A stretch of 64,000 nucleotides of DNA from Monocercomonoides exilis PA203. Taxonomy: Eukaryota; Protista; Preaxostyla. Location of the stretch: positions 372,001 to 436,000 of the forward strand of contig LSRY02000048.1 of NCBI GenBank assembly GCA_001643675.2, given 5' to 3'. The position numbers were made by a program, and so were the translations under genes. Below the pieces are notes generated by a model. The model did no database searches, was not told the DNA's origin, and was given only the letters and a program-made list of their open reading frames with translations. Of this stretch, positions 3,226 to 44,478 are shown piece by piece (within the stretch, counting starts at the first letter, position 1; each line of letters opens with the position of its first letter).

Positions 3226-6200
3226 CTAGTAAGGTGCTTTGGAAAAATACATCTCCATTTCTGATGGATTATAATCAAAGTACATAAAGCAGCCCTGCCG
3301 CTCCCACTGATAGAAGGAGTCGTGGAGCACAACCACTCGGCACTCCGAGGTCTCCTTCGTGACAGAAGTGTAGATGAAGCTCTCGTGCAGCGTGGGCTGG
3401 CGGAGGCGAATGTGCTTCTGGAGAGGCTGTGGAGAAACTGACAGAGCGTCTGATTGCTCTGTCATTGAAGCCGTGTCTGAGTACAAAGTTGACATTGTCG
3501 CTCCTTTCGTTTGAGCGCTTTCATCAGCAGATATGGATGAAGATCGCGATGGCCGACAAGAAGATGTTTGAGAAGCTGTCTGATCCATAGATGCAGAAGG
3601 TGAGGTGCTTGATGCAACCGCATCTTGCACTGGGTGAGTCGTTAGAGTCTCCTGAGACATTAACTGTTCAAGTTGCTTTTTCTTGCTTGCTTCTTTCTGA
3701 GAATGATGAGCCCTATTAAATGCCTTTGTATCAGGTGCGATAAGCAGAGATGCACATGCATCCTTCAGTGCAAGTGATGAAGAGAAAAACATTCTGTCTC
3801 TGAATGTGTCATTGGACAAAAGCTGCTTTCCGATGTTTTGATGAGAAAGACGAAGAAGCGACCGCTTCTGCTGAGCAACAAAATGAGCATTCGACATAAC
3901 CCCTCTTCTCACCTTGCGCATTTTCGTGAGGCGCAGTTTTTCTCTTTCGAGTTGTTTTGCATACTTGCTCCACTTCGACCGTTTTCGGATCTCTTCGTTC
4001 CATCCCAGCTGCTCAAAATACAACGTGTGCAGCCAATCCACAGGCGCAAAGCGAGGCATCATCCTCGGCGCCTCAATGCTGCTCTTAACGAATCCGTATT
4101 CTTCATCCAGGTCACACACTTCTCTCCCGGTTGAATCAAACACTGGCCTTGTTTCTTCTGCACTTAGAGAGTCCATCACAACATGCGGCTTCATGGCAGA
4201 ATCTGGGGAAGCTGAGGGAGAAGAAGAAGCAGAAGCAGCACTCGCAGAAGAAGAAGACAGTGCCCATGCAGAAGCCCACGTAGATGCAGGAGCAGGTGCA
4301 GGAACAGGCCGTCTCCTTTTGGGGGGTACCTGAGGGCGGGTGTCGATGTGAGCAACGACAGACTGATTGCCCTGCGTCCACTGCTCAGTGTATGTCTGAC
4401 CGGGCGGATGATACGAGTGAGTGTATCCAGGATACACCAGCGACAATCGAATAACAGGAGTTGTGGTGGATGTGAGAGGAAAGCCCATCGCATTCTCAGT
4501 CACAAACTCTCCAGAAACATAGTCCCAGGCGAAGCCCCTGAGCGATATGCCAACAATCAGACAGCTGGCTTCCCCGTTGGCATCCTCAAACGAAAACAGG
4601 TGGGGCTTTTCGTAGCACTGGGAGTCCAGAGGCAATGAAGAGGAAGGCAAGGCATCCGGATCTTGAGCCATTGGCGAAAATGAAGACGAAGAGCCAGTCG
4701 CAGCAGCAGAATATGAAGAAGAATAAGTGGAATAAGTGGAAGAAGAAGAAGAATGAGCGTGATGATACGAATGGCTGGTAAGAAAAGTGCGTGGATCGAC
4801 AGGAAGGAAAGTGAGGGCGATGTATGCGTCCTCAAGAAATAGTGCACGGCACCCTTGCCGCAGCGCTTTTCTCAAAGACAGCAGATGGGCCTCGTGTCGG
4901 AAGGCCGAGAAGAAGCCGACCGGAGAAATGAGAAGCGACACAGGAAAAGCGATCGGGCGGAGATGATCAGCGTTTGTCATCCAGTTGATCAGGAACTGTT
5001 TGCGCAGATACAACCACGAAGACATTATGGGTATGTTCAGCGCAACATGGGCAGGGAACGGAGCGCAGCTGAGGTATCTGGGCGGGATGGCATCTCGGCT
5101 GGACTCCCTAGCAACGTCGAGGATGTAGTGATAGGAACCAGTGAAGGTAGTGAACCGCCGGAGGATAAACGTACAATACATGGTGATTGCCGAGGAGATG
5201 GCTGAAATAGCAGAGTTGAACGTTTCAGCCTCCTCGTTTATGACAGAGAAGAGAAGAGCTTCTTGATGTGACGCTCTGGAAGACCGATACGCAGTTAGAA
5301 TTTCTCTGCTGATGACTGAAGGAAGACTCATTCCGATGCGATATTCGCGGGTGATGAAGGCATCAACAATAGAAAGTGTGGAGAGCTGTGTTCTGCGCAT
5401 TACAAGTGTTTCATCGAAAGAGGGCGAGGAGGAAGAAGAAGAGGAGGAAGAGGAGGACGATGTTGAAGATGATACAGAAGAAGCACTCGAATAAGCAGGG
5501 GAAGAGGCGCAAGCAGAGTCTGCAAGAGGCGAAACTGACGAAGTTGATGAATAATTAGATGAAGCAAAGGAGTAACAGGAAGAAGAAGTCGGAGACGCTT
5601 TCTGCAGAGATGGGGAAGTGAATGGAGATACAAGTGAAGCGTTGGACAGCCGCTGTGTAGAGTTTGCAGCAGAGGGAGAGGCAGATGCAGGCGATTGGGG
5701 CCGAACGGGAGAACACGAATGATCAGACGAGTCGGCAGATGGAGAGCGCTTTGGCGAGCAGCTGCGTGCTGTGAAGATGGTACGGGCTCTGTGCTCAAAG
5801 TCGACATCAGTCTTGGCACTTATCTGAGTACGAGACTTGGCAATGGTTGGCGATATGATCTGTGGCGTTGAAGCCAGACTGGATGAGGCAGAAGAAGGAA
5901 GTGAATGAATGAGATTCAGATCGTATGCATTTGCCAAGTACTGGCACCGCAGCTGTGGATGCAGTTGCTGCTGCTCGATGGAGCTCTGCAAACAAGAATA
6001 GTTGCGTCTCTTTAAGTAGATAAAGCCGTGAGGAAGAAGATTGCGTGGCCCACAGAGCGGAGCGAGAGTGGAGAGCAGCCGTCTCGATGCCTCGAGGAAC
6101 GACTGCTTCATGACAGAGTATTTCAGATGCAGATTTGGCAGGCTGAAGCGAACAGGCGCTTTCTCCATGACAAACGAGGCAATCTTCACACGGTCGAAAC

Positions 6201-9200
6201 GGGAGCCTCTTAGTGACAGCGGAAGTTTGAGTGTCAGCTTCTGCTGGATACTGCTGGCGATGGTTCGGCTGAGGTTGCTGAAGTTGTTGATATTGTCTTT
6301 GTTTGTGGTGCTGTTCTCAATTGTGCCTGTGCGCGATAGATAGGAGAATGGGTCATAGCTAATGAATGTGTTTGCAGTTGATTGCAGCGACAAGTTGTGC
6401 AGAGGAGACAAGAAGTCGAAGTCTGGGTGGAATATCTCCAGCTTCAAGTACTCATTCAACAGTCTCGAAAGGAAAGTCAGCTCCTTCTTGTTTCCGAACA
6501 CCAGTGGAAAGATGCACGACAGGAATTCCGTCTTTATCAATGTTAAGCCGTTGATGAGGAGTAGTCGCAGAACTCTTGGATAAGGGTACTTCAGCCTACT
6601 TGACCACTTGTCCACCATCTTATCTGTGTTCAGGTGGATCGAGAACTGCGCATCCGACGGGAATGAAGTTGAGAACATGTCACGAGTGTTTGGCGGCTCT
6701 GTGTTTTGCATCGTGTTCTGCTCAAACTGAGGGAAAGAAGACGACAATCTTCTCTGCTTCTCTGCCTCGTCTTCGTACTCTGCGAAGAGCGCAAAGATCT
6801 CTTTGTTGGCCAGCATCCAGTTGTACATGAGGATGCGCAGTCTTTTGATCAGCATCACAAACGTGCCCTGTGAATACACACGCGGCGGGATGGTTGAACC
6901 AATCCTGCTATCTACCAGATTTGTCGCTTGGTCGTATTCGCCAATCGGAGCAGTGTTGTTCAGAAGAACAATTCGCGAGCGGTTCCTTGCCACAACAAAT
7001 GTCAGACACACGGCAAACAGCAAGGGGCTCCAGAACATGCAGAATGGATGCAGGAACTCGAACTCTGGTGGAATCCACGTGATGACACGGGCGAAGCAGT
7101 AGTTCGGCGAGTGATCAATATCTTCAGTGTGCAGGTTGAGCCACGAGATCATCTGTGATGAATATGCCTCGCTCTTTATCCCTTCGTTCGTGATGATGTA
7201 CAGATGCGTGCATGGCCACGGATAGCGCGGATGAATAGGATATTCAAGACGACCCAGTTGCAGTTGGCTTTTCGTCTGTTGGGAGACTGCAGGGAACACA
7301 GCATCAAGCAGATAGTGCGGAACAGATGGCTGGAAGATCCTCTTTGTCAGCTGGTCCCAGAAATCACTGGCGCGCTGGTGGTACATAAAGATCCTCCATC
7401 GAACAAGTGCATTTACACTCATCTTGTTCACAGGAAGTGCTCGCCGTCGCTTTTGCTGCGGTGCCATCAGCTGCTCCCGGCCTTCAAGTTGCGCAGCATT
7501 TCGAGATGGCCTTTGGTTATCCATTGCAATTCCAATCATGTTTGAATTTGCACCTCCTGAATCATTCTCATTGATCGTCTGGTTGCCTGAGATTCTGTTT
7601 GCAAAGAACGGTTTTGACACATTTGAAGCTATGTGTCTTCTGTTGGGTAACTCGAAGTTGTTCTCTTGTTCGTTGTTTCTGTGATGCTCGTCTATCGGAA
7701 CAGTGAACTGTGGATACACAATCGATGGAGGAAACGAGGAAAAGCGGTCAAACATGCGAGTTGTGAAGGCTGCTGACAAAAAGCCGTTGATCATCAGAGA
7801 GTGAGGGACAATGTGCCACACTGGCCTTCCCTTTCTGTCGCCATTCAAAATTTGTGTTGTAATTTTGTTTGCAATCTGGGAGTTTGCATCCATATTTGAC
7901 TTGTACTTGATTGAGGCCTTGTTGATCGCCTGCATTGTTATAGGGCCGTGCATGGCAGTTGTGTAGTCGATGCACAGCGGACTCAGCACAGGAACAAGCA
8001 GCTTCGGTACAGTGACTGACGCAGCAGGCAGCTGGCAAGAAATGATGTTTGGCACAAGCTGATACTCGTTCTTCTTCGTGAACTGCTTTCGGTTGAGAGA
8101 TGGCAGATAAACAGAGGCGTTGAACAAGCTTGGATGTGCAGATGTGATTGTTGGTGTGTAATAGCTGACGTTTTCTACTTGCTTCTGGATCATCTGCTCC
8201 ATACACGTCATCACAGGCATTGACATTCCCTGTGTTGAAAGCAGCCAGATATACACAGATTCTATCAGTTGATGAGGAAGCAAGTGTCTGACCAGCAAGA
8301 GCCGTGCAAGTGGTGTGATGATTGTGTCCAAATTATCAGGCAGTGGGACAAGCTCAACATGCTGTGTGGTTATCCACTTGATCCACTGTGATGTGTGATT
8401 GAGAAAAGATGTGGTGAATGGTGACTCTTCTGAAAGAAGCTCAGATTTTTTGTGAGCGAAGAACGGAATGGCATTGATGTAAATGAACGAAGACGACTCG
8501 TTTGAACGCTTTGCCACTGAGAAGCACTCGTCAAGAAACCGGAAGCATGCCATTGCCTGCAGCCACACACCAACTGGAGGATCACACACATTATTGTTGG
8601 AAGCAGAGGAAGATGAAGAGGGCAATGGAAGAGCAGCCATTCCAGGAGAATATTCACCGATTTTGCTGAGTAGATAAGCTTTGAGGAAATTGGTGCTTGA
8701 AGAAGCTGGATCAAATGCGGATGGGCCGGTTGCAGAATAGTCAGCCCTTTGACTGCCCATTCTGTCACCGTGAGTTGCCTGGGCACTCTGCTTGCTTTCA
8801 TCATACTGACCTGCCTCCAAAAAGAATGGAGACAGCTCCTTCATTGAAAAATCGTCCATTAGTTCAAATGTCTTTGGCTTTGTGCTGTTTTCGTCATTCA
8901 TTTCAGCTGCTTCTGCGAAGTGACGAGTGAATTCGCGAGTAACTACAGTGTTTGTCTTGAATCCCAGAATATCTTCAGGTATTTTCATTGGATAGATAAG
9001 CGACTTCAGCATGTGGCAGTTGTTGTCCTTGCTGTCCATCTGCCACAGCTTCGTTGCAAATGACTCCTCGTTGTACCAGAATCTCTCTGACGATGGCGGA
9101 AATACATTGAACATCCCACTGATCTTCTGAGTTGCTCTGATCGATGTGCACATTGCCAGCAGGAACATGAAAGAAAGACGTGAAAACTGGAAGGGACTGT

Positions 9201-12200
9201 TGCCCAGTGAATCTGTTTGGTTGAAGTCGATGAATTGCAAGATGCGGTTGGCAAAGACGTATCCAATTGTCTGGATAAGAGAGGTCACATTTGGATTAGC
9301 AAGAGTCTCTGCGTCAAATGCAGTCGATTGAGAAGATGATGATACAGATGAGAAATACGAGTAACTGTCTGCTTCCACTCTGTCAAATGCTCCATACCTC
9401 TGTGAGTTCACTGATGAATATGCCGAGCTTGCTGGCGAATGAATACGCGATGCAACATTTGAAGAAGCTGAACTGTCGCTGGGTGAATATGGAGTGTCTG
9501 GGCGTGAGGCAGTCGAGTAGGTGACTCCATATGGCTGCATAATCGGATCAGTTCGCTGCATCCGCGAGAAGTCTGAGCTCAGCGAATCGACAGTGGCATC
9601 CGACGAGATGAAGAAGAACGGTGACAGCAGCGCCATTTTCTGCTCTTTCTCAGAGACGGGCGCAATCGGCTTGATGCTTTCCTCGTCAATCGACCACAGA
9701 TGCATCCCTCTCCTCATTTGCGCTCCCTTCCGTGCTTTCAGACTCCTCCGCGCAAATGTCATTTCCAAGCTTTCCTCCTGCGACGATGTGCATTCGTCGT
9801 CTTCACTCACAGAGACATCCTGCACACGTCCCTTTGGTGACAAGCTATCTGATCGCATTCTTTCATTCGCATGTTTCGTTGAGAAGCTGGCAGACGAGTC
9901 ATCTTCGGTACGGACTGGCATTGCAGACAGCTCAGCTATTCCATACCGCTTCTTCGGCTGCCGACTGAGAATGGCTGATTCGTCAATTGTTGGAACATTT
10001 GAATGTGTTGAACTGACAGAATTGCTTCTGATTGAATCGTGCGTAATGCGGAAGCTGTTGCTTCTGGTGTTTCGAGGTCGGTGCTTGAGCTTCCTCCTCG
10101 GTTTTTCAACAGCGTTTCCAATGACTGTTCCTGATGTTGTTTTCAGCATTTGTTGTGAAAGATCACACTTCAATGTGTCGCGAATCACATTTGCAAGAGT
10201 TGAAAATAGCTGATATGCAGTGGGCAAATGATGCACACGGAACATGTTCATCATCAACTTCTTCAGTGAGAAGAAATGCTGATATTCGTACAAGTTGGAG
10301 TGTGCAAAGGTCAGAAGACTCGCATAGATATCTCTCACATAGCATGCAAGCGGGGCAAATCCAGAGATCGCGTTTTCGTACCGCTCGATTAGTCTGAGAA
10401 GATCAAAGCTTTTCTCTCTTGAAGCAGACACCTCCGCAATGAAATCTGAAGAAACAGCAAAGAAATGTGATGTTATTTGCGTGCTGAGCTGATAAATGTA
10501 TGTTCCCCAGTCATTCTCTTTGACGCACAATGTGAACATCATCTGATGGATCACCATTAGAGCATCCAGCCTCCTCCAAAAGGCTGATGGATGAAGCGAT
10601 GGTGCAATGACTGAATATAGAAGCTGAGTCTGGAACGAGCGAGGAATAAACATCGGAGACCAGTTGATGAGCGTACAGTTCTGGAAGAGCTTTGTGTTGG
10701 CCAGCGTGATGTTGCTTCCGTGTCCAGGGTACAGCGACATCTCGTCCTTCACAAAGAGATACAGACTGAAACCCGGCTTTGGCTCGAAAGTGTGTCCGAA
10801 GAACTGGAATGGCTGCACAGGTACTTTGTCAGAACAGATGGCAAGAGTATCCAGAAAAGCAAAGATGTTGCAGCATCGCTCAGGAGTGACCTCTTCGTTT
10901 ATGGAGATATACTCCACAAATAGCGGAAGACCGCTCAGCGCAGCGTCAATTGCATGCTGGAAGAACAGAGTGCTTAAGATATGTGTGCACACCACAGGTG
11001 TTGTGCGCCGCTTCTTCCGCATCATCCAATACTGGGCTGTTCCCAGCGGGTCGATGAACACACACACAGGCGACGAGCATGCTGCATGCACCATCGTCGC
11101 ACCTCCGCTTGCCCTGCTCAGCATTCCGAGTGCTGTGTGGGTGGCAGCAGCAGACAGTAGCGACTGCTCGTCGGGTGGAACACCTTCGCTCATCACCTGG
11201 AAGACGCTCGAAGGGCCGTGAAGGACCGTCCAGATCGGCCGCATCACAGGTGCTATCAAAGAGCTGAATGAGTTCAGAATGTCTTCGTTGTATACCAAAT
11301 CGTCTAACGTTCCAGTGTCAATGCAAGTGTTTGGATCAGGAATGAAATCACCGACCAGCTTCGATGAAAAGCTGCTTAATGCATAAGAATCAGGCTTGTC
11401 CTTATCTGAAGGTTCATCTGTGGATAAATCAGATGCCTCTATGTTCTTTCTTTTGCTCGAATTATTCGAATTGTTTGAATTTCTTGATTTCGTTTCTTTT
11501 TGTTTCTCCTGTGATGAAACCTTTGGCGAGCCAAATGGATCATCATAACTATCAGTCGATGAGGAATCTGAAGGAGAAACACAAGAACTCGCATTTTTGT
11601 GTTTTTGTGTTGGACTCTTTGGCTTCTCGTAAGGTGAATGTGCCGCCTTTGGATCAGTTTGTGACTGTTCATTGTTCTCTTCATCTTTGTCCGTGGAGTA
11701 TGGAATTTGTGCAATGTCAAGAAAAGTCTTCCATTTGCTCACAACAGAATGCATCAACTGAGGTGGAATAACACCATTGAACGTGAGAAAAGCTGCAGCC
11801 AAAATGCAATCTCCAACACATTTTTTCAGATTGTTGTCGATTCGCAGCTCTTCCAGTCTCCAACAGATGAGAAAATGCTCAAAGGCTCCAAAGCTGGTGT
11901 CTTTATCTGTCGAACTGTGGATCAAGTCGCCCAGAAGTGGATGGAATGACAAATTGCTTGCATTCGAATGAGTAGGCAAAGAAAAGCCTTCAAATCGGTT
12001 TGTGGTTGAAGGCAGCTCTTTTGCCTTAAGATCGCTCATTTCTTTCTCATCTTTTGCATTTTCGACTGCTTGTTGTTCCGAAGCATTTACATTTTGGATG
12101 CAAATGCTAGATACAGAATGCATCAGTTCTGCATTTCTTTTTGACGATGCTTTTGATGATAAAACATCAGATGAAGAAGGTGTGATTGAAGAAGAAGAAG

Positions 12201-15200
12201 AAGACGATGATGAAAGACTGTCATCATCTTCTTCTTTGCTTTTCAGTGTCACTTCAGTCTGAGAAGATAAAAGTGAAGTCACAGAAGATGTACCAGGAGC
12301 ATATGTCGTTATAGTCGTTCCAGTTGTTGACGGAGTCATAAATCCAATCGAAGCTGAAGGAAGAAGCGACACAGTAGCCGCAGCAGCTGCATCTATTGAA
12401 GTAGGATGCTGATCAATCAACATGTCAGACGAAGAACTTGAAGGAGAAAGGGCAGATGCTTCAGACGATGTGGATGTGACTGATGAGACCGAAGAAACAG
12501 TAGACGTCAATGAAGATGTTGTCTGCGACTGCAAAAGAGGAGGATATGCTTGCTCTTCTGTGTAACTGACTGAAGAACTGTCTGTTTCTATCTCTGTTTC
12601 TATCTCTTCACTGAAGCTTGTCTCTTCAAAGCTTGATAGTGTTGCTGCTTTTTGCAGCGATGCACTCGAATTCTGCTGGCTCAAAGACGAATGAACATTG
12701 ACTGGCGAGCTAATCGCACCGCCCTGTACTGAATGTCTTGCATTTCGACTGCGGCGCTTGTGTCTTTCGGCGTCTGAGTCGAATCTTTCCGCCTCGCTGA
12801 AAGTGAGCAGGTTCATGTCAGTGACCACAAACATCTGACTCAGCAGCTCAGCGCAGAGTGTCTGCTCCGCACTCGTCTGCTGCACCAGCCGCTCCAACTT
12901 CTCCAGCTCTGTGCTGACGCTGTTGCTGATCACGGACAGTGAGTCCAGGCGAGGAACATTCTGCTGCGGGTGCTCTTTCTCCCACACAGCAGCAGTGATG
13001 ATGTCGTACACAGGAAGCAGCCGTTCGCAGTTCAGTTCGATGTCTCTTCTGTTCAGCTCGCCCATTGCCAGGTATGGATACAGCAGCTCAATCTGCTCGT
13101 CGGTGAGTGTCAGGTCGGCCAGAGAAGCAAGTGACGTCTGGAAGGCAGGCTGGTTCATCATCGCTTGCACAATGTCGAATGAGTCGACAAGCAGAAACTC
13201 TGTTTTGGTCTGTCTTCTGGCTGCTAGTGAGGAAGGCGTGGGTGAAGGCGATGGAGAAGGAGAAGGTGTCTTGTTGGTTGAACTTCGATCGCTTTTCAAG
13301 GGACGAGAATCTTTGCTCTTTGCGTTAGCATTCTTGCTTGAAGAGATTAATAACTTTGGCACTCCTTCATTTTTACTTGCTTTTAGTTGAGCAGGCTGTG
13401 TCAGAGTCGATGAACGACTGCTTGTGTTACTCAAAGATCCATTTTCTTTTGTGTTTGAAGGTGATGCTGCTAGCAAAAACGGAGCAGCACTCGAACCAGC
13501 TGTGGAAGAAAGAGAGGACGATGCAGCATACTCACAAGAAACTAATTTTCCCGTTTCATTCAATTCAGAATCTCCACTTTTTTGTGCTTTTGGATTGACA
13601 ACAGTCGAATTCAGAGCGGAAGCAGAGTCTGAACTGTGATGCTGTGAAGGAAGAGGGAAAGTGCTGTTCAAGTGAGTCGAGTCATTCCATGGCGAATTCG
13701 AAGTATGAGTAGCATTCGCTGCATATCCAATTCTCCGCTTCTGCACTGTCTTGAATTCAACAGCATGCAAGTTCTTTCGAAGCGCAATCAGAATCATGTC
13801 GAACATCAGGCGGATCACACGAGGCGGCCGGTGCAGCCGCTTCACCCACAGCAGATCACCCAGCTTTGCGTCTTTCTTCCTCTTCGCAATCTTCTCCCTC
13901 ACTTCGTTCTCCTTCACTGCCCTTATTGTCATTTCCAGTATAGTCACTGAGCGTGTTCTTTCTTCTGAAGACGCCTCGCACAGTGTCTGCAGCACATTCT
14001 GCTGCTTCGCCAGCTCCTGCGACAGACTATTCAGTCTGCTCAGACACATCTTCAGTTTCTCTCTGAAGAAGAAGTACTTTGAGCCAAGCACAGGAAACAT
14101 CTTATATGACCGCAGAACATAAGTCAGGTAATGGAAGCGTGTAACGAATGTGATCTGAACAGAAGTCAGCCTGTTAATGATGCGGGAGAAAACGCCTTTC
14201 ATGTGGAGCAGGTCCTTCATGCGCTGATTAGAGAGTGTCTCGAAGATGTGGCAGAAGCGGATGAAGAACGACACGTCCACAAATCCTGCCCGGAAGAAGA
14301 GCCACTCAGGCATCAGCTGGCGATGCAGGCAGTAGTCGCAGAGCTGCTTGACGTCTAAGTAAATAGACGAGATTGTCGCTGCAATAGACTCCATTTGGGC
14401 AAAAACGACATGCTGGCGGAGATTCATCAAGTGTTTCTGCACATTCTGCTGTGTCCGGCTCGCAATGTGCTCAATCTGCTCGTTGCTGTTAAACGCGTGG
14501 AAATGGCGCTGGCTGGTCAGATTGTCAAATAGCGCAAGAGAAGAAGAAGAGCCAGGCGCTGCCAGACTTGGGTTGGAGTCATACATAAAGCCAGCGGAGC
14601 TCATTCCGTTGTGCATTGCAGATGCAGTTCCAGATGCAGATGACATTTGCATCATGCTGTTGTCTCCCTTTCGCAGTATTGGCGATGGGTGGTCGTGATC
14701 ACGATCAAACACAGAGGCAGAGGCAGCTGCAGCTGCAGAGGAAGAATCAGCATTTGCAGACCGCTCAACGACACGGTTGAGGAAAAGAGACAGACGCTGG
14801 TTCAGTTTGATGTCGTAGATGTGCTGCTCAAGTGATTTTAGTGATTGTATCCTTGTCATCGAGAATCCCGAGCGTATCAGCTGCGAGCGGTGTGTTCTTG
14901 TCTTGCGTGCGAGTGTGCCCACACTCGACTCTTCAGACGACTCCTTGTCGTTGCTCCGTGTCTCTGGAGATCCCTCGTTGCTGTTACTGTTGCTATTACT
15001 GTTGCTGTTTCCACTGCCGCTGCTGTTGCTGGCGCTGTCTGCGCTGTCGCTGCTGGCAGACATGTTGTTTCCGCTGTCTGACTGATTCTGCAGTGACTGA
15101 GGCAGACAAATGGAAATGTTGTTCTTCAGTAAAAACGATGGATACTTCATTGTCAACAGAGTTGAGCCCAGCTGATGCAGTTGTGGTTGTGGTTGTTCTG

Positions 15201-18200
15201 ATTGCTGTTGAGGTTGTGGTTGTTGTGACGGTGGCAAGTCAGCATCTGTCCTCAAAAGAGCATTGGCTGACTTCAGAGAGAGTGCTGAAAGTGAGTCGGT
15301 GCTTTCATTGTGCAGCAGCTCTTCAGGTATCTCTTTGATCGACCCAATCTTCGAGAAGCGCATATCAGTCAGGTTGATTTCTGGAGCACGTGTCAACTGC
15401 TCATCTTTGGCCTTTGAACGGAATGTCTTGCCTTTCTCTATCTTTTGTGGTGGAACAAACTTGTCGTGACGCAATACTTTTGTAAAGCGCTTCAGACGCG
15501 ATGTAGTCAGTGGCTTGCCGCTGTTTGATCTGTCCAAAGAAGGTGAAATCATTTCTTTCGGTTTCGGTTTGGCAGCAGAAGCAATGGCATGTGGAGAGAA
15601 AGAGCCGAAACGAGTTCTTTTGGTATCTGGCGATTTTTGCAAAGGAGAACCCTTTTGATTGCTGCTCATTGAACGTCTCAAAAACGTGTTTGTTCTTTTT
15701 TGTGTGGATGGGCTCGATTTAGAAGTCAATGGAGATAAGCTGACTTCATCAGCTTCAGCACTTCTTCCTCTTTGTGCAGCAAACTCGTTCTCTGCAATTG
15801 CTTGCTCACTTGGCATCTTCCTCTGCTCGGAGCTTCTTCGCTTCCTCGCCATCTTCGTCTGTGTGCTTTGATGCTCACTCAGTGGATGTGAATGCTGTCC
15901 TTTCGAATGCATTGATCCTTTTGATTGCTGCTTGGAGTGCTTCGAATGACCGGAAGATGAGGAGGAGGAAGAAGAAGAGCGGTGCTTGCGAGGAAGGAAG
16001 CGGGGTGGAAGAGGAACAGGGCGGCAAAGCGGAGGTGGAGGCAATATTGGCAGCGCTTGAGTGGTGTGCCGTGCATACAGATTCCGAAACTCAGTGGCAT
16101 TGGCAAAGGAGACGTAGTTGACAGAAGGAATTCGTGTGGTCTGGCCGATCTCGAAGAAGTGGAGGTTGCACTTGCCCTTTTGAAGAGGATAGCTGTCGTA
16201 CAGACGGATTGGCAGCGGCACTGCAAATGAGTGGCGTTTGACCTGAGATGTGATGTCATCACCAGTTGGAGAGGAAGAGGAGGTGGAAGAAGAAGCTGAA
16301 GAAGAAGAAGATGATGATGATGATGAAGACGAGGAAGAAGACGAGGATGATGACAAAGTTATTGAACTGGCAGAGATAGCTGCTGCAGATGCAGTTCCTG
16401 ACGCGCTTGCATTCTTCAATGAAGCCATCTCAGTTGTGGGTGTTAAGACAATATCGAAATCACCTGAGCCAACCAAACTCTGATCTCCACAATAATCAGA
16501 ACTGGGAGAAGAGAACAAGGACCCGTCGAGTGAAGACAGAGTAGAAACAGATTGAGTATACTGCTGATCCATTCCTGTGCCATTCGCCAGGCGTGTCGAG
16601 TTGTTCTTCGCAGAGTCTAAAACGAGAGAAAGCAGCAAGAACCCGCTGTCCATTGGTGAGTATTTCTTGCTGTGCTTCGTTAGCCTGCACACTTCTTGTT
16701 CTGCTTCTGCTCCTGTTTCTATTTCTGTACCAACTTCTGAGTCTTGCCGCCCATGACTTTCTGAACAGTTCATTGAGCTTTCGTTGACAGATGAATGAGG
16801 ATAAGTTATCGACGACATTGTGGCAGGCAGGCTGTTTTCAGTCAGAATTGGTGGGAAGAACAAGTCCTTTGTGCATTTCACGAGTGCAACGTGTGTCGAT
16901 GGCTGAATTGTTTCATAGCGTACAAGTGGTGCCAGCCAAGTGAAATAGGATAGCCCAGGCACAAATGTCGTCTTTACAGAAGATCTGATTCGGTTGTTCT
17001 GGTTCAAATGATTATGAAATTCATTAGAAGCTGTTTGATGGTGCATAGGAGAACAAGGTGAAATAGATGAATAGAACGACGAACCAGAACTCGAGAGCGA
17101 TGAAGACGAATCTGATTTGAAGCTATTTGTAGCAGAAACTGAAGAAGAAACAGAAGAAGATGTCGATGAAGTTGAAGATGCCGAAGCCGAAGCTGAAGAT
17201 GATGAGTTTTGCGCAGCATGTTCTCCTTTTTTGAATGGAGAAGAGAACAAATTCTGTGCCACCATCAGTTTCCGAACAGACTCATTCTTCTTGTCTGTGA
17301 AACGCTGAATGAGCGATCCAATCCAATAGTCGCTTTTATCCATCAAACTAGCATCTTTCACAGCAACAGCAGAAGAAGAACTTGAAGCAATTGCTCCTTC
17401 ATTGCTCATATTCCCACTCAAATAATTCGCTCCTCCATAATTGTGAGCAAGAGGCATCTGCTCCTTCGGAAGTGATAGCGTCTCTGCAACAAACAAAAAT
17501 CGCAAGTTCTGCTTCAGCTGTCGCACCAGCCACTCTTCGTCAATTGCATCACTCCGCCCATTGATACGTGCCTCCAACAGAAGTGCAGCGACCTCTTCTT
17601 CAGAGAAGAGATATAGCAAAGATGTGGAAGAACTCACGATGCACTCCAGAATGGAGCTGATCTCAGACTCAGTCAAAGAGTCAGGGTTGTTCTTGTCCTT
17701 TGTGCAGAAGGCGACGGAACAGCTTCTCCGCACATCATCTGAATATGCATACTGCTCGCACCCTTTCAGCATCGACGACTGCGAACTAGCCAGCAGGTGC
17801 TCGCTCCAGTCATACCATGTCTCTTCAGACGGGTTGGCCAGCATTTCTCTGTCTGCTGTTCTGTCTGTCTCTCCAGGCACAAACCCGACGTCCACACGCA
17901 TCTTGCGGGAGGAGTCTACAAGATCACTGGGGGATGACATGTCAGCGATTTCAGACAGAAACACAGCTGCTATGATTTTGCTCTTGCAGAAGATGGCGGT
18001 CTCCATCAGCGAGCGGAGGGAGGAAATGAACGTGCCATACGATGGGACAAGTGGCAGAATCACAAACTGCACCTCCGCAATGGCAGAGACTGCGCCGAGT
18101 ATCTCAGGAGTGAATGAATGTGGGGGTGTGAACAAGCAGACATGTGAATCTGCAATTTTTTCAGCGATCTTCATCAGCTTTACCCCCAACGCATCGTCAA

Positions 18201-30200: not shown

Positions 30201-33200
30201 AGCCTGTTTTTCTCTCACCTCCTGTTGTTTCTTCATCATTCTGTCCCATTCCCTGCTGTTGTGTCTTTCCTCTCCTGGCACCGTTTGTTCCATTGTCAGA
30301 AAATGCTCCAAAAGTTCCCTTTGAGCTGAGTGTGCGTGAGTGTGCTCGCATGTGTGACTGCACTGCAGCTGCTGCTTCTGCAGCCTGTGGGTCGCCCACA
30401 GTCTCAAAAAAGGTGTCGCTCGAATCGTCTGCGCAGACAGTGCTGTTGTTCATGTTGTTCTCATTCCATTCATCATCCCCAAATGACTCAGAAGACAAAG
30501 CAGACGAGTCGCTTGATGCTCCGTCGAAGTACATACGGTTGGCGCTTCTGCCTCTTCGGGGAGATCTTCCTTCACCAGTGCCAGTCAGCTCCAAGGAAGA
30601 AGTGGAGGTTGAGGAGTTACAGCCAAGTAGCTCAGAAGACGAGTCGGTTGAATCTCCTCTTGTGTTGCACGCCTCTTCTCGACGAAGGCGCCTTCGTTCC
30701 TTTTCAATCATTATTCTTGCTTTAAGTGTGCTGCTCTTCTTCGCCTCTTGTCCTTCTTCCTCCATCAAACATACATCTCGGATGTTCGGAAACAAACGTT
30801 GCAGACATGTCTTTATTCCGTGTGGAGAGCGTGTGAATGACAGAAGTTGTGTTATTTCTTCTTCAGACAGCAGGAACAGCCTCGGAAACTGGTCCTGCTT
30901 CTTCAGAATGAACGGCTTGAGGAGGTCTTTGCAGTCACTCAGCTGTTTGTGGATCGAAGGCAAGATGTGCGAGATGAAAGAATCCGGTGCAAACGAATGG
31001 ATAACCACTGGATCTTCTCTAATTTTGTTCATGAGCATCTGCCAGTCATCGCGAATCTTCACAAACAAACGCATTTCTCCGCGAAGTGCAACTGCCACAT
31101 CGTATGACTCAAACAGACCCCGCAGCGACATCCACAGCCGCTGTGCGTTGATAAACAAGGAAAGAATAGAAGTCAATGAATCCACAGTGGCAGAGAACGG
31201 GAGCAGCTGGTTGAGGAACACAGAAACATGTGCGGAGTATGTGAGAGAAGAGAGAGTCACAAGTGTTTCATTGGCTTCAGAAATTGCAATGTCGCATGAC
31301 TGCTCTGAAATAATGACATCTTCAAACTTGCGCAGTGAATCTGTGGAGTTCGAATCAGGTTGGTGGCCGTGCATTCCCTTGTTGCCCATGTGATCCATTG
31401 GCATGTCAGAATGAGGGGCATCAATCATCGAAGCATCGATTATTGGCACAGCACACCCATCGTTCTGGTCGCTGATCTCGCAGAACATCAGCCGGATGTC
31501 TTCTTCCCACTTTCGCTGCAGCCTTTTGAGCTCCTCTTCGACTTTCCTCTCACCAAACACAGAAGAAATGAGCGATGCCAGTTGTGCGCTGTGCAGATGA
31601 GGCTGTGCATCGATAAGTGTGCCCATGAGTGGCGAGATAACCTCTTCCTGAAGAGAAGGTGTGTGTTGCATGCCAGACAGCACTGCTGCTTTCATCTTCA
31701 GCGCCTTCTGCTGCCGCGCAGTCTGAATGAGAAAGTGCGGATTCTGCGAATGGAATGAGCAAAAGCGCTGTGTTGAGGTCTGATCGCTTGTGATGCTTGG
31801 AGATTGTTGAGGAAACGAGCCAGACAGAGACGACTGGTAGAACAGCGCAGGCGATGAATCAGGCAAAAGATCGGATTTGTCGTCGCTCTGTCCCTTTGAA
31901 AGTGAAGCGATTTCAGCCAGCAGCTGTGTGTGCCGTGTGATGAATGCTACTTTCTCCCAGTGGCGCTTCCTGAAGTCTCTATGCGGGATGTGTGCGATGG
32001 AGTGCAGTGGCTGGGCAACAGAGCTTATATCGCTTGCTAGTTGCTCCTGTGTCTGCATTGCATGTGATCTGTAGTGCTTTGAAGCCTTCACTCTCATCTG
32101 CTCCATCACTTCTATGTCAGCCATGAACCCGTTTGCACGCACCTCCGCCTCAGCTGCCACTTTGTCTGTGAATGGCTCTTTCCTCAGGTCCTGCAGCCAC
32201 TGGTGGAACTGTGTGTATGTTGTGGCCAGCTTCTCCTCGTACTCCATCTTCAGCAGCTCCGACTCTAATGCCTGTGACTTTGTCTGAGGGATGTTCAGCA
32301 AGATCTCGTTGCGGTTGATGGAGACAAGCTGGTTGAAGGCTTCCTTCAGATGGTCGACAAACATTTGGATCTTCTCTTTCTTCAGCATCATCGACGTCAC
32401 ATCGTTGTCGCTCCGCTTCAGCTGCAGCTTCCGAAACAGCTTCGACTGGTTCAGCATAATCTGCAGCGACATCTCAAAATTGTTCTTCTTCGACATCGTC
32501 TGCGACAGAAACGCTATTTTCTTGCTTTCCAATGTGGCGAAAAACTCTTCAGAGGCGATTCTTATCTCGCTCGATGCGTCCTTCAGCTTCATAATCAGCA
32601 CTTTCAGCTTCTTGTTTGTGTGTCCGCTTGCAATCTGTTCGAGCGAGTCCACCGTCTCCTTCGCATCGTCATAGCACAACTCGCATTGCTCTGTATCGTC
32701 CTTGTACTCATTCAGCAGCTCTGATATTTTGTTGATTTCGTCCATTGAGCTGCAGTTGTTGATGATCGAAGAAGCAGATTTTGACTCAACTGGAGATGGT
32801 GCAATCAACGGTACATATGAAAGTGTGCCCTGATCGGTAGATTTCGGCAGTTGATTTGCTTTGCTTTGTTCTTTGCTTGTTTGAGTTGAATAAGGAGAAG
32901 GAGAAGGAGAAGAGGAGGAAGCAGCCAGATTAGCTGTGCTGTTTTCTTCAATAAATGGTCCCTGTGTCTTCTGCGTGGCTGCTGCGTTGACAATAGCAAG
33001 AAGCCTCTTTTTGAAGTTTGAGAGGCGCAGATCCAGCAGTTTCAGGTGCTCAACTGTCATATCTTCCAAAAAAGTGACAAAATGCTGTCGCCAGCTGAGC
33101 AGTTTTTCAATCAGATAAGGCAAAAGAATCCGTGAGGAAGTTAAGACCATCCCACGAGTGACAGGGAATGGGGAGAAAATTAGAGACAAATACTCAGCCA

Positions 33201-36200
33201 GCTGGGAGATGGGGTACTCCATCGAGAGGTCAGAGATCTTGGAGGTGTCAAACCCGTCTCGTTGGTAGGGAGATAGTGATGCTGACATTGATGACACTGA
33301 TGATGATGATGATGCTGAGGCTGAAACTGAAGCTGATGGAGGCGATTGCAGTGTTCCAGAGGGCTGGTGCATCTCTCTCAGCAGCAGCTCCTGCATTAAG
33401 TGTGCTTCTGATGGTGCAGAAATGCCAGGCTGGTCAAGCAGCATTTGAACAGAGTTATACGACGACTTGTCCAAATGCGAGGATTTCAATGAAAAATCTT
33501 TCAGAATCTGTTTCAGATTTGCTTCCTTCTGCTCTCTGAGGATGTTTAAATCAGCAGAATATGCCTTCGCCTTCTGATGCACTCTGTTCATGTTCACGAT
33601 CGTCAGCACCACAATCCACATCGACAGCCTCCGGATGGAGCGGAGCACGTACTGCCGGATCGCAATGAAGAACGCTCGCTTCTTCTGCACATCTTCTCTG
33701 CCTTCGAGACACTTGTGCATGTGATTCGACAGAGAAACAATGGAGCAGAAATACGAACCACAGATAGTGCAGCGGTAGGGCTGGGGGTCTGGAATGAATG
33801 TCTCCACAGGAGATGTGGGATCGTGGGGTACTACAGGGAACAAAGCACAGAAGCTCGGAGACACTGCAGACGAGTAGGAAAGCCGCACTCTATCGTAGAC
33901 AGATTGGTGGCGCTGGTCAACACACATTGAAGGCACTGTGCACACGATAAACTGCTCATTCGGAGCGATCTCAATCACATTGCGTGATCTGGGCGCACAA
34001 TACTGGAGCCTGTCTCGGATCTTCTTGTTTGTGGCATTTTCGCCTTCGGATTCAGAACGCTGTGTCTCTTCGAATGTGTTCTGGCTGCTTTCCTTTGTGG
34101 CCAACGTGGAGAGAGAAGTTAAAGATACAGAGGCTATTGAAAGAGATGGGATGTTCAGTTTATTTACAGCTGATGTCTTTGACTCATTACCTTGTGAACT
34201 TTTTTGTCTGTTGTGGTTTGTTCCATGCTGCTGCTTCTTCTTCTTGTCATCCAAATCTGCATCGATTTCTTTTTGTTGTTTTTCGTTTATGATGCTTTGC
34301 TCTTCTTCGTCTTCGTCTTCTTCATCGTTGTCTTCTTCCTCTTCCTCTTCTTCATCCTCCTCCTCCTCTTCTTCTTCTTCTTCATCTTCACCTTCGCCTT
34401 CAGCAAATCTCTCCGTTTCCTTCTTTCTCAAATGATTTTCTGTGCGAAGTTGATCGTTTTCATTGGAATCGTTGCTTTCTTCATCAGAACTTGTCTGATA
34501 TGTCTTTATCCTGTTATTCATTGAGTTTCTGTTCCGTTTGGCTTTGGCAGAACCTAAAGCAGAAATATTACGTGAATCAGATGAAGAAGAAGAAGATGAT
34601 GATGATGATGAAGTATTATTATTTTCACCACTTGCTTTGTTTGCATTCATTCTTTCTTCATTTCTCTTCTTTCGTTTTGTGGCAATCCCTTTCAACAATT
34701 CAGAATTCTCCACTTCACTTGCTTTTGGCTTCTCAATCGTCTTCCTCCTCACCAAATCCGCTCGATCCAAATGAGCAAAGCGTTCAGGTGCAGAAAACGT
34801 GGGTAGATCTCTTCTCTGCCCAGGAGCAGATGCCAAAGAAGAGAGAGTGGAGCAGATGAGCGAGATATCCACAGTAAATGCCCAGCGAATCACAGCAAAG
34901 CGGTTGAGGAGCGTCGTACGCAGGTTTGTTGGCCCCACGTAGCAGATGGAAGTACAGAGCGTTGCCACAATCAGAGGACGCGAGGAGGAAATCAGCTCCC
35001 ACATTGAGTCTTCTGCCTTGATCTGATCGGCTGGCTGCTCAGCTATTGTCAGAAACCGCATGTTCGACGGGATGGTTGCATTGATGGCTGGCGAGAACGA
35101 CGACGGCATCTGCTCCGGGTGCCTGTTGGTATGCAGACGCGTGTCAAACCCATTTTTCACTGAAGACGCCTCAGAGTCGCTTTCAGAATAGCTGTTTTTC
35201 TCCTTCACTGCTTTCAAGCGAGGAGAAGATTTTCTGGGTGAAGAAATGCTTTTTGCAGAGAGGCGGTTGTTTCTGTCGAGAAAAGCTCGTTTTGAACGAG
35301 AAGGTGACTGCGAACGAGAATACAAGTGGAAAGCGGATGAGAGCATCGGAGAATGTGAATACGAGCTGCGAGAGCGATGGTGCTGAGGCTGCGAAAGAGG
35401 GCGTCTTGTCTTGCTGGTGGTGTAGTTGTAGCTATTGCTATTGTTATTGCCATTGTTATAATTGTTAATACTGCTGCTGCTGCTGCTGAGGTTGATGCTT
35501 GCATTGACTGAGCCGTTTCTGCCTCTCAGTTGCCCACCAAAGTCCAATTTCCTTCTGAAGAGGCTGTTGGCATACTTGTTCTGGATCGATGAACCCAGAC
35601 GCAACGAACGCGAAAGAGGAAATTTCTTAATTGCCAGCAAAGAATCAGGCTTTGTGAGCTTCGACTGTGTCTTTTGCTGCTTCTGCTGGCGAAGAAGCTG
35701 ACGCTGACTTTGCCGCTGGCGTTGTGCCAATTGCAATTTCGGGATTATTTTGCTCTCATTTTCTGAAAGAATACCACTTGGTGGGAGGGAAACAGTCAAC
35801 GAGCGGTTTCTCTGAACAATTGCATTAGAAGATGCTTCTTCTTCTTCTTCTGATGTTGGCGCTGATGATGAAGGAATCACCATCGACATCGCCATCTTCT
35901 TCATCCTCTGATTGAACTGCGGCCTTTGCGGATGGAAATGTGATGGCTGAAAGCTCGTCAGGTTTGTGTAATCATCTGTTACTTTCCAATCCTTCACACA
36001 CACACTCGTCTCCAGCTTCGGCAAGTTTTGCACTGTTTTGAAGAGATACTGGAAGATGTCGTTGATCCCGACTTGCACAACAGAGGCGCTGGGGCCGTAG
36101 ACAAAGCGGTTGTTGGAGAAGGAGAGGTCGAAGTACAATGGAGCAACCTCACCAGACTTGTAGTAATACACATTTGTGTGGAATCTTTCAGAAAGAACGT

Positions 36201-39200
36201 CGTTGAAGGCTTTGGTGAGAACTGAAGGATCTGAAGAGGAAGAAGAGGAAGAAGAAGGTGATGATGATGAAAAAGTTGAATGTGACTTCTTCTTCTTTGT
36301 TGAATGTTTCTTACTTCCGTGATGAACTGCTGTTGACTCCAGAGGCCTCAAAAGAGGCATAAATATGTTCAGCGTGGACAGGATGCTGTGGTGTATGCAC
36401 TTCATATAAGTGTCTTGAGCACTCACCAGCACCTCCATAAACCCTCTTTTCAGCTCATCGTACACTTTCCGGCCGTAATGGAACACTTTCTGATGCGGAT
36501 CCACAGGAATTCCTGTGAAAAACTGAGAAACGTGCATCAATTTCTGGCTTTTTGAGGTGTTTGCTTCAGTTTCGTCGTTCAATTCGTCAATTCTCCACTC
36601 ATTTTTCTGTGCAGCTGCAGCAGCAGTATTCAATGTCGAATTCGCAAGTTTCGTCTTTTCCACTTTCCTTTCACTCTGCCTGCTCAAAAACGAGTCAACG
36701 GGAAGTGAGTTGTCTTCAAACAAGTGCGACGTGATGTTTGCCACGTAGTAGATGATCTCCTTGTTCATCATCGACAGTGTCTCCTCTGCATACGTCCCTG
36801 TGTTAGACACAATTTTGATAGGTGTATTGAAAATATTCCGCAGCTCCTGGTATCCTCCGACAATATCGTCAAAGTACATCACCAGATCCATCCTCACCAT
36901 CTCGCTCAAATACCTCAGTTTTCCGCAGTTGAACAGAGCAGCAGCTGTTTGATACTCGTTGCAGTCTTCCAGTCTCGTTGGGTAGTCCTCATCGAAGCAG
37001 GAATACCTCAGCCTCGCTATCTTCAGCAGCGTCGAATCGATCCGCATGTGCCTCTTCACCAGACTCTTCACAAAGTCGCAGAAAAACACTGTTGTTGCAC
37101 CAAAGCGCATGTAAGTGAGTGTCTGCGGCAGCTTTCTCCACGTGCACGTTGCACGCATCTGCTCCAGCTGCCCTTCGTAGAAGTCGACAAAGGGCTTCAG
37201 CACTGGAATCGCTGAGTGCGGAATCAGGCTATAGACAGCTTCTCTCAGCCGCAGCGTCTGCTGGATCACCATCTCGGTTGCATGAACCGCTTCTAGCAAA
37301 AAGGGCGCGTTTGTGTGAATGACAGGGTGGAGTGCCTTCTTGAACAGTGCTGACTGCCAGATGCCCCTGTCAAAAAGAGCTTTGATGTCCTTGAAGAGGT
37401 TCATGTGCTTCGGACTGACGGTGGAGGAGAAAGTTGGGATCTGCAGCTCAGTCACAATGGGGAAGGAGTCGATGGTGGAGGAGGCTGTGCTCGAGGCAAG
37501 GAAAACTGGCTCACGGGGCTGCAGCGTGCGGGAGAAGGAGAGAACAAGCTGGGCTGTGTTGTTCCATTTTTCCTGCTTCCTCTTATTCAGCTGATGCTGA
37601 TTATGATGCTGATGCTGTGAAGAAGAAGAAGAAGAAGTTTTGTCATCTGCTTCGTTCTCTTGCAGTGCCTGTGCAGGTGTTGCATAGTCGAAGAACGGCT
37701 GGTCTAAAAACTCCTTTAATCTTTCTGGGATGCGTGACGCCCACACACGCATGCAGAGCCAGATTGCTTTTGTGATGTCTTCAACCATCGACAAGAAAGA
37801 GGCTTCTAATGAATTCAGCTGAGAAATGGTGGTCTGATAGATCGGATGGATACATGGGAGCAGCTGGGCTTGGCTGTTAGCTGCGGTTGTTAGATTACTG
37901 TGATTGTTATTGTTATTGTTATTGTTATTGTTACTGTTGTTGAGGTTATTTTGATTATTTTTCACAGCTGAATTGAAATTGTTAGCATTGTTGGAATAAT
38001 TGTTTCCTGTGTTGTTTGATTTTGTGGAAGAAGATGGAACAGAAGAAGAAGGGGAAGTGGAAGCCCCATCTAACAATGCAAGCGTCTCGAGTGTGGAAGA
38101 ATGCGACGCAGAGGACGAAAACGGATACTGTGCAGACGCCAAAGAGGAAGAAGATAGCATTTGTGGTATGATGTTTGGAGGAGAAGATTTGTTGGTGCGA
38201 ACAGAAGGTGCATCAAGACTTGTTCTCCAGTGCTTTGCAGCAGCAGATGTGGTGCGGGACGACGAAAACGCAGAGGAGAACGCAGAGGGAAACGGAGCTG
38301 TCTGTTTGGACTGGCTGTTGGGAGTGCTGTGTGATTGAGAGTGGGAATGAGAGTGAGAATGTGAATGAGAATCAGATTGTGTGTGAGAATGCGAATGAGA
38401 ATGCAAATGTAAATGATCATCTGAATCATTCTTTTGCATCGACTGCATCTGCATTTGCGCAAGTGCTTCCTTCAGAACCGTCTCTCTGACACGCTCAATG
38501 AACGGCAGAGGGCTCGAAAGGGTGGACACGACCTGTTTTGTGGCAAGGAGGAACGAGCGGACGATGGACGCCTGGCGATAGGAAGACAAGTTGGAGATGC
38601 GCAGCACAAGTACAGGGTCATAGGAGCTTTCCTGTTGCGGAGGGAAGGAAAGATTTTGTGGCAAATGATTTGGTTGGTTTAATTGGTTTGGCTGGTTTGG
38701 TTGATAAAATTGAGGATGTTGCTGTTGAGACTGCAAAGATTGGTGTGATTGAAGTAAATTCTGTGCATTTTGTGTTTGATGAGGCAAAAGGGGCATTAGT
38801 TCAGCTGAGGGGGCATCAGAAGCAGGGATGAGTGGATTGAATGTGCCATTGTGTTGCTGTTGTTGTTGATGTTGATGAGAAGGAAGAGGAAAAGGAGGAG
38901 AAGGGTGAAGATGAGGACTATAATGAGGCTGTTGAATTTGCTGCAGCTGGAGCTGAAGCTGAAGATGTTGCTGTTTAAAACGATGTTGATTGTGATTATA
39001 TTGATAAGGTTGATAATGTTGATTATTCTTCTCAGCTGAAGCTGACTGCAGATCCAAAATTGGCACACGAGGCAAAGAAGGCAAAGGCGTGGTCTGGTTA
39101 AAATTACTCCGAATTTTCGCTTGTTGTCTTGTCGGTGGACGGAAATACTCATTCTGTTCGTTAAGATCATTCATTTGTCTTTGTTCAATTTGCTTCAGTC

Positions 39201-44478: not shown

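What the first reader, a model, noticed from the sequence alone, without database searches (positions are those of the whole stretch)
3226..44478. A giant pseudo-dynein of about 13,750 aa: a complete heavy chain inflated threefold and predicted motor-dead
Seen: a stop-free 41.2-kb frame with tail, linker, AAA ring, stalk, MTBD and C-terminal landmarks in correct order, separated by many low-complexity inserts of roughly 100-750 aa or more. Known: dynein heavy chains are about 4,000-4,700 aa and need AAA1 ATP hydrolysis for motility. Inference: no stop or frameshift in 41 kb of microsatellite-rich DNA implies purifying selection, so this is an expressed protein (roughly 1.5 MDa) and not a pseudogene. 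It could be a static microtubule cross-linker or scaffold with disordered, phosphorylatable arms. Oxymonads have unusual cross-bridged microtubule organelles (axostyle, preaxostyle, pelta) that are plausible destinations. That localisation is speculation.
Basis: partly seen in the sequence, partly recalled or inferred. Interest (0 to 1): 0.92.

Follow-up and report, generated by a model that had tools for sequence, protein, structure and literature searches.

The report
Giant motor-dead dynein of oxymonads
A gut protist transcribes an unbroken gene for a 13,700-residue version of the dynein motor protein that has lost its ATP-burning engine, one of a family of such dead motors in oxymonads that probably act as fixed struts on microtubules rather than as motors.

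Summary
Real. The minus strand holds one stop-free frame (3226-44556; 13,721 aa from the first ATG at 44391). Dynein modules run in order from late tail to C-sequence; the first ~2,300 aa are not recognisably dynein. RNA contigs run unspliced through the inserts tested and stop at the 5' end, so those inserts are exonic. AAA1 keeps its fold but has lost Walker A, Walker B, both sensors and the AAA2 arginine finger. AAA3 and AAA4 P-loops are gone. The AAA2 P-loop and its AAA3 arginine partner survive. The microtubule-binding domain is predicted to fold around a ~165-aa insert. It is not a one-off: ten Blattamonas paralogs (full-length ones 6,000-7,000 aa) share a family-specific tail zinc finger and, where long enough to check, the same losses. 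The family probably derives from the outer-arm gamma/DNAH5/8 class (moderate support). About 7,200 aa are polar inserts, mostly expanded at sites Blattamonas shares, so the size looks like lineage-wide inflation. Non-motile dyneins are known in animals (DNAHX, DNHD1); I found no paper on this oxymonad family. The scan noted the family earlier on other DNA (s1-471129). An axostyle role is untested.

The parts
3226..44391 (-). Coding frame, 13,721 aa plus TAG; frame stays open to 44556. Residue numbers below count from 44556.
   Evidence: RNA contigs cover 40800 to about 44535 colinearly and fall to near zero upstream
34567..37629 (-). Tail remnant (aa about 2310-3330), matching Blattamonas family tails and only weakly canonical tails
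33577..33852 (-). Family-specific C2H2/C2HC-like zinc-finger region in the tail (Cys/His core 33709-33771)
   Evidence: alignment A1; weak zf-C2H2 hits in 7 of 9 rows, below Pfam cut-offs where shown; HMM finds all 10 Blattamonas kin, two of them held out, and no other dynein
28372..32409 (-). Neck and linker (DHC_N2), split by the largest insert
   Evidence: Pfam E 4e-33
28579..30780 (-). Largest polar insert, 734 aa (168 aa at the same site in Blattamonas P0001)
   Evidence: all sampled words of 27300-33200 are held by four RNA runs
25912..26538 (-). AAA1: fold kept, all catalytic motifs lost (Walker A site about 26458-26487 shortened and replaced; Walker B site about 26314-26331; sensors I and II)
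   Evidence: AF2 pLDDT 82.5; Foldseek to dyneins E 1.5e-10
24199..24222 (-). AAA2 P-loop GEAGCGKS, the only intact Walker A
22324..22350 (-). Position of the AAA2 arginine finger that serves AAA1: arginine lost
19282..20229 (-). AAA3 remnant: Walker A lost; arginine motif PRFARHF facing the AAA2 site kept (19363-19392)
17467..18759 (-). AAA3 lid and AAA4 remnant: Walker A lost
12757..14076 (-). Distal stalk and gamma-type microtubule-binding domain; Ser-rich insert of about 165 aa (13222-13707) between the two flap strands
   Evidence: AF2 model; best structural matches are dynein stalk/MTBD entries, Z 13-15.5
11929..12795 (-). Polar insert of about 290 aa interrupting the base of stalk CC2; much shorter in Blattamonas P0001
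10177..11319 (-). AAA5 region
   Evidence: hhalign E 2e-11
8017..8424 (-). AAA6 region
3229..5289 (-). C-sequence region with inserts; last 80 aa conserved with Blattamonas kin

Best explanation
A functional but non-motile dynein heavy chain of an oxymonad-specific family, probably derived from a duplicated outer-arm gamma/DNAH5/8 chain. Shown: the module order, loss of every AAA1 catalytic element and of the AAA3/AAA4 P-loops, retention of both halves of the AAA2 nucleotide site, a foldable microtubule-binding domain, and transcription with inserts in the two regions tested. Inferred: with no hydrolysis there is no linker swing or stalk sliding; ATP held at AAA2 stabilises the ring; the protein is anchored by its tail and contacts a microtubule or another dynein through its head, as a static strut or spacer. 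The 33 inserts loop out as disordered surface and mostly reflect lineage-wide protein inflation. The most likely site is a microtubule array of the oxymonad cytoskeleton (axostyle, preaxostyle or pelta); the flagellum is the alternative.
For: Motif loss shared with all 8 Blattamonas kin that span AAA1, while the fold is kept. AAA2 P-loop plus AAA3 arginine kept; a non-hydrolysing AAA2 ATP as glue is described for RNF213, which shares the AAA2/3/4 architecture with dynein (PMC7311170). MTBD helices and flap modelled around the insert. Nineteen collinear blocks with P0001. Family is one clade at 100. Gamma-class affinity by MTBD and AAA2 profile scores, PDB ranking and trees. RNA. Bridges within axostyle rows resemble dynein arms (PMC2114570, PMC2110753).
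Against: No protein-level evidence. RNA covers about 9.6 of 41 kb and comes from one study, as contigs. Microtubule binding is unproven: the ORF lacks the basic residue of helix H3, proximal CC1 is atypical and CC2 carries a 290-aa insert; in DNAHX similar inserts are argued to abolish binding (PMC11785096). The axostyle bridges studied classically are ATP-sensitive and spaced about 16 nm (spacing from memory), in motile genera from the other oxymonad branch. Gamma origin drops to support 77 without the long-branched Clytia row.
Confidence: 0.6

Rival explanations
1. DNAHX-like regulator: the dead chain pairs with an active heavy chain and holds it in an inhibited or transport-ready state during flagellar dynein assembly, without itself binding microtubules.
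For: DNAHX comes from the same outer-arm class, has a degenerate AAA1, a pre-H3 MTBD insert and stalk inserts, and forms a heterodimer. An AAA1-dead Clytia chain joins the family in two trees.
Against: Ten or more paralogs per genome fit a structural role better than a single chaperone (inference). The gamma-type dimerising tail is barely recognisable. The MTBD helices are conserved. Clytia scores near the bottom on family profiles, so the join may be long-branch attraction.
Confidence: 0.22
2. Slowly decaying ghost genes: duplicates kept in frame because truncated products would be toxic, drifting and accumulating inserts with no positive function.
For: Very long branches, with only about 30% identity to the nearest kin. 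The idea was proposed for DNHD1 (PMC8754002). Inserts are unconserved in sequence.
Against: The same selective pattern (AAA2 site, AAA3 arginine, zinc finger, MTBD, C-terminal 80 aa) is kept across deeply diverged paralogs in two genera. The 41-kb frame has no stop and is transcribed.
Confidence: 0.08
3. A motor or switch that still works through the AAA2 site or through a coupled active partner.
For: AAA2 Walker A is intact in all members checked.
Against: In dynein AAA1 is the site that drives movement and AAA2 is non-hydrolysing. I did not locate an AAA2 Walker B, since that stretch is broken by inserts.
Confidence: 0.05
4. The mature product is smaller than the frame: untested inserts are spliced out or the chain is cleaved after translation.
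For: About 31 kb of the frame were not tested against RNA, and no protein data exist.
Against: No joints inside the frame in 40800-44535; the 734-aa insert is present in RNA; the inserts are GC-rich, stop-free and in frame, unlike the AT-rich flanks.
Confidence: 0.05

Closest known systems
DNAHX / probably Kollmar class 12 (animal non-motile heavy chain; PMC11785096, PMC5100056)
   Same: Outer-arm DNAH5/8 origin, degenerate AAA1, extra length from disordered inserts, insert before MTBD helix H3, stalk inserts.
   Different: DNAHX is about 5,300 aa, reported absent from protists, and still binds ATP at AAA1. The Clytia chain P0154, which I take for a likely member, keeps the AAA3 P-loop and a clear gamma tail. 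Here the AAA1 P-loop is shortened, AAA3/4 are dead, the tail has a zinc finger, and the family has ten or more paralogs.
DNHD1 (human orphan heavy chain)
   Same: Divergent heavy chain lacking AAA1 Walker B, with disordered inserts.
   Different: Animal-restricted class and single gene. No DNHD1 sequence was compared here.
Outer-arm gamma / DNAH5/8 heavy chains
   Same: Module order, flap-bearing MTBD, best PDB sequence matches.
   Different: Active ATPases of about 4,600 aa with intact AAA1 motifs and no zinc finger.
Blattamonas nauphoetae 'putative dynein heavy chain' proteins (e.g. KAK2962130.1, KAK2958275.1, KAK2958153.1, KAK2951150.1)
   Same: Same family: collinear, same motif losses, same zinc finger, shared insert sites.
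   Different: Full-length members are 5,966-6,966 aa, about half the size. They carry automatic names only.
RNF213
   Same: Six-AAA ring with a non-hydrolysing ATP at AAA2.
   Different: Not a dynein; AAA3/4 are active and it is an E3 ligase.

Membership tests
Dynein heavy chain superfamily | Linker (DHC_N2) followed by six AAA modules in order | tested here: met
Dynein heavy chain superfamily | Coiled-coil stalk with six-helix MTBD between AAA4 and AAA5 | tested here: met
   proximal CC1 atypical and CC2 interrupted
Dynein heavy chain superfamily | C-sequence after AAA6 | tested here: met
   hhalign E 2e-4 and 2.5e-3, weak but in place
Dynein heavy chain superfamily | Long N-terminal tail (DHC_N1) | tested here: inconclusive
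   no Pfam hit; weak hits aa 2427-2973 only; kin P0008, P0012, P0003 score 1e-7 to 1e-3
Active dynein motors | AAA1 Walker A, Walker B, sensors I/II and AAA2 arginine finger | tested here: not met
Active dynein motors | ATP hydrolysis and microtubule gliding | not testable with these tools
   needs biochemistry
Outer-arm gamma/DNAH5/8 class (as parent) | Groups with the class in motor-domain trees | tested here: inconclusive
   SH-aLRT 100 with Clytia included, 77 without; very long branch; careful tree did not finish
Outer-arm gamma/DNAH5/8 class (as parent) | Gamma-type MTBD with flap | tested here: met
   top eight profile scores are gamma-class rows, 29-43 bits against 18 or less; highest identity match 6l4p_B
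DNAHX / class 12 | One clade with DNAHX | tested here: inconclusive
   joins the Clytia chain at 89, flagged as long branches meeting; that chain's identity as DNAHX is my inference
DNAHX / class 12 | Well-conserved gamma-like tail | tested here: not met
   Clytia 505 bits against below zero for the ORF on a gamma tail HMM
DNAHX / class 12 | Folded PS2i insert in AAA4S | not tested
   no DNAHX C-terminal half was fetched
DNHD1 / class 11 | Orthology to DNHD1 | not tested
   no DNHD1 sequence among the hits
Oxymonad dead-dynein family (described here) | Tail zinc finger, AAA2-only P-loop, one clade with Blattamonas kin | tested here: met
Pseudogene | Stops, frameshifts or no transcription | tested here: not met

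The most novel reading that the evidence does not exclude
This family is the long-unidentified dynein-like cross-bridge of the oxymonad axostyle: an outer-arm chain recruited to a cytoplasmic microtubule bundle, then multiplied and switched off in Monocercomonoides and Blattamonas, with kin in the motile-axostyle genera (Saccinobaculus, Pyrsonympha, Oxymonas) either keeping a live AAA1 or serving as the passive links beside an active motor.
Probability: 0.25. Interest if true: 0.9.

Novelty: new variant of a known kind. Interest (0 to 1): 0.72.

Why it matters
Non-motile dynein heavy chains have been described as single genes in animals, and DNAHX was reported absent from protists. Here a protist lineage keeps ten or more, probably from the same outer-arm parent, with a cleaner loss of catalysis and one conserved structural nucleotide site. 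That is a natural experiment on what a dynein does without its engine. It offers named candidates for the dynein-like axostyle bridges seen in 1973-1986, and the idea is testable now because single-cell transcriptomes of Saccinobaculus, Pyrsonympha and Oxymonas were published in 2026 (PMC13002328). The size alone matters less, since many proteins of this genome appear inflated.

Tried and rejected
Chance frame or assembly artefact: rejected. Inserts as introns: rejected for the two regions tested. DNA contamination of the RNA runs: unlikely, because the upstream 2 kb is almost uncovered. Inteins: not tested directly; the inserts are low-complexity and gave no Pfam hits. Word-based search with the P0001 AAA1-AAA2 piece: blank; the P0008 search returned no other family member, so these searches are insensitive here and say nothing about Streblomastix, Paratrimastix or Trimastix. 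Whole-family MAFFT timed out. Careful IQ-TREE run unfinished. Base differences in RNA contigs were too few and of unclear origin for pN/pS. No insert-stripped, joined sequence was handed to any database search; blocks were concatenated only in local alignments for trees. Oxymonad genome papers do not describe these proteins in their main text; the 2019 supplement was not available.

Full report
Observation. Six-frame translation gives one minus-strand frame from 44556 to 3226 with 13,777 codons and no internal stop, against 441-605 stops in each other frame. Base composition predicts about 645 stops. Residue numbers here count from 44556. The frame is about 45-51% GC over most of its length; the flanks are 33-41%. 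All tandem arrays inside it have periods divisible by three.

Source. The nearest kin are all Blattamonas nauphoetae. The scan lists 99 pieces for this genome and the Monocercomonoides exilis assembly has 101 contigs. A large receptor-like gene with a kinase remnant lies next door, and other scan notes name M. exilis. M. exilis is therefore likely, by inference.

It is a dynein heavy chain. Pfam finds DHC_N2, AAA_6 and Dynein_AAA_lid in order and nothing in the C-terminal third. An HMM from 19 canonical chains hits 11 places in strict order from tail to AAA6. Profile-profile alignment of family blocks to canonical blocks supports AAA3, AAA4, AAA5, AAA6 and the C-sequence, but not the N-terminal tail. 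The first 2,300 aa match nothing; aa 2310-3330 match the tails of Blattamonas kin. AlphaFold2 folds AAA1 as a regular AAA+ domain (pLDDT 82.5) whose Foldseek matches are dyneins (E 1.5e-10). The stalk tip folds as CC1, H1, H2, a flap strand, about 160 disordered residues, the second flap strand, H3-H6 and CC2; the four best structural matches are dynein stalk/MTBD entries. Both models used canonical dyneins in the alignment, so they show compatibility with the fold, not independent proof.

The motor is dead by sequence. In AAA1, Walker A GPAGTGKT is replaced and shortened by about five residues and Walker B FDEFNR reads IGNIHL. Sensor I, the sensor II arginine and the AAA2 arginine finger are lost too. 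AAA3 and AAA4 have no Walker A. AAA2 keeps GEAGCGKS, and the AAA3 arginine motif that faces the AAA2 site (RxxRHF) is kept. AAA1 is the site that drives movement in dynein, and a non-hydrolysing AAA2 ATP acts as glue between domains in the related RNF213 ring (PMC7311170). Selective survival of both halves of that site argues for a folded ring under selection.

It is transcribed with its inserts. Four RNA runs of one 2024 study hold all sampled words of 27300-33200, which includes the 734-aa insert. Laid on 40800-46700, RNA contigs cover the frame colinearly to about 44535, one 3.7-kb contig runs unspliced through two large inserts, no joint lies within the frame, and coverage falls to near zero upstream apart from a few short matches. 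The upstream gap argues against DNA carry-over, though the tool warns that holes in contigs prove little. About 31 kb remain untested, and translation is not shown.

It is one of a family. The best hits among 1.8 billion proteins are Blattamonas paralogs P0001, P0003, P0005, P0006, P0007, P0008, P0010, P0012, P0038 and P0109, plus a 276-aa metagenome fragment, P0004, whose nearest relative is this ORF at 37%. P0001 aligns in 19 collinear blocks from aa 3574 to the C-terminus. The eight that reach AAA2 each have only that P-loop and lack the AAA1 motifs. All ten share a C2H2/C2HC-like zinc finger in the tail that none of the other dyneins fetched has; two members left out of the alignment were recovered at E 3e-25 and 1e-7. 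The family is one clade at full support. Scan notes report further dead chains of 9,000-12,000 aa in this genome, and one follow-up reached the same family reading; I did not check those loci.

Origin. PDB sequence matches rank DNAH5 and other outer-arm chains of that class first, and the only dynein hit for a Blattamonas stalk-AAA5 piece is Chlamydomonas gamma. On the family MTBD profile the eight best rows are gamma-class. Trees put the family with the gamma clade at SH-aLRT 100 when an AAA1-dead Clytia chain is included and at 77 without it. The branch is very long, so I call this likely, not shown. Rows left out of the IQ-TREE runs for speed are listed in those scripts.

Size. By a hydrophobicity proxy the ORF has about 6,200 ordered-like and 7,500 polar residues, against 4,600-5,400 and 1,300-2,100 in Blattamonas kin and 3,400-4,100 and 500-950 in canonical chains. 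Gaps between conserved blocks are longer than in P0001 at all 18 sites, typically two to four times, for example 734 against 168 aa in the linker. Motor loss thus predates the threefold size. Unchecked scan notes describe the same inflation in many unrelated proteins of this genome, so I treat the extreme length as mostly a lineage trait. The neighbouring IFT172-like gene shows no such inserts in the part seen, so inflation is not universal.

How it most likely works. Shown: architecture, motif pattern, foldable MTBD, transcription in two regions. Inferred: no power stroke; a ring held by AAA2-bound nucleotide; tail anchoring; head contact with a microtubule or a partner dynein; inserts as disordered loops. 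I put 0.6 on a static structural role, 0.22 on a DNAHX-like partner of active dyneins, and the rest on ghost genes, residual activity or a smaller mature product. Microtubule binding is the weak link: H1 keeps basic residues but the H3 basic residue is lost in this member, and CC2 is interrupted by about 290 aa.

Comparison with what is known. DNAHX is a non-motile animal chain from the outer-arm DNAH5/8 class with degenerate AAA1, stalk and pre-H3 inserts, reported absent from protists; DNHD1 is a second case (PMC11785096; PMC8754002). Kollmar's survey lists divergent classes and orphans but did not analyse their ATP sites (PMC5100056). The oxymonad genome papers describe a near-complete axonemal set and do not mention this family in the main text. 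Classical work found a dynein-like ATPase and dynein-like bridges in motile oxymonad axostyles (PMC2108841, PMC2110753, PMC2114570), in genera from the other main oxymonad branch (PMC13002328). So it works like DNAHX/DNHD1 in being a dead heavy chain, but it fails the DNAHX tail test and is best filed as a separate, lineage-specific, expanded variant. The paper library omits most subscription journals, so 'undescribed' is provisional.

Verdict. Observation confirmed; interpretation partly supported; new variant of a known kind; interest 0.72. 

Noticed in passing
window 3 to about 2750, + strand: 3' part of an IFT172-like intraflagellar transport gene (Pfam TPR_IF140-IFT172 E 2e-15), intron-split, convergent with the dead dynein and not visibly inflated.
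   Followed up: partly
window 46984-55218, + strand: 2,745-codon frame for a receptor-like protein: signal-like start, repetitive ectodomain, one transmembrane stretch and a kinase remnant at the C-terminus (Pfam PK_Tyr_Ser-Thr E 6e-7). Likely one of the large tyrosine-kinase-like family of this genome.
   Followed up: partly
window 59671-60207, + strand: Arf-family small GTPase exon (Pfam Arf E 2e-48).
   Followed up: no
window 44551-44600, - strand: Possible intron 3' end (branch-like CTGAT, pyrimidine tract, AG) at the very start of the open frame; an upstream exon could add a few residues. RNA contigs end at about 44535 and do not test it.
   Followed up: partly
window 44900-46120: Ser-rich, coding-like but stop-broken sequence upstream of the gene with short RNA contig matches at 44952-45033 and 45945-46113; perhaps a decayed repeat or gene piece.
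   Followed up: no
window 41200: One RNA contig (run X1) carries a 12-base, frame-preserving insertion inside a His/Gln/Ser insert: length variation without frameshift.
   Followed up: no
P0154 (Clytia hemisphaerica, 3,323 aa): Animal heavy chain with a clear gamma-type tail, degenerate AAA1 Walker A and B, and intact AAA2 and AAA3 P-loops; probably DNAHX/class 12.
   Followed up: partly
L001 129-959 (JGI 3300042616): Metagenome fragment encoding a linker piece whose closest relative is this ORF (37%): a family member in a third, unidentified organism.
   Followed up: partly
Blattamonas P0005, P0006, P0008, P0010, P0109: Several family members are annotated as partial chains (1,352-4,758 aa) on long contigs; split gene models or true truncations were not distinguished.
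   Followed up: no
window 62823-64000, + strand: Two frames of a helical, Glu/Lys-rich protein with no convincing Pfam match.
   Followed up: no
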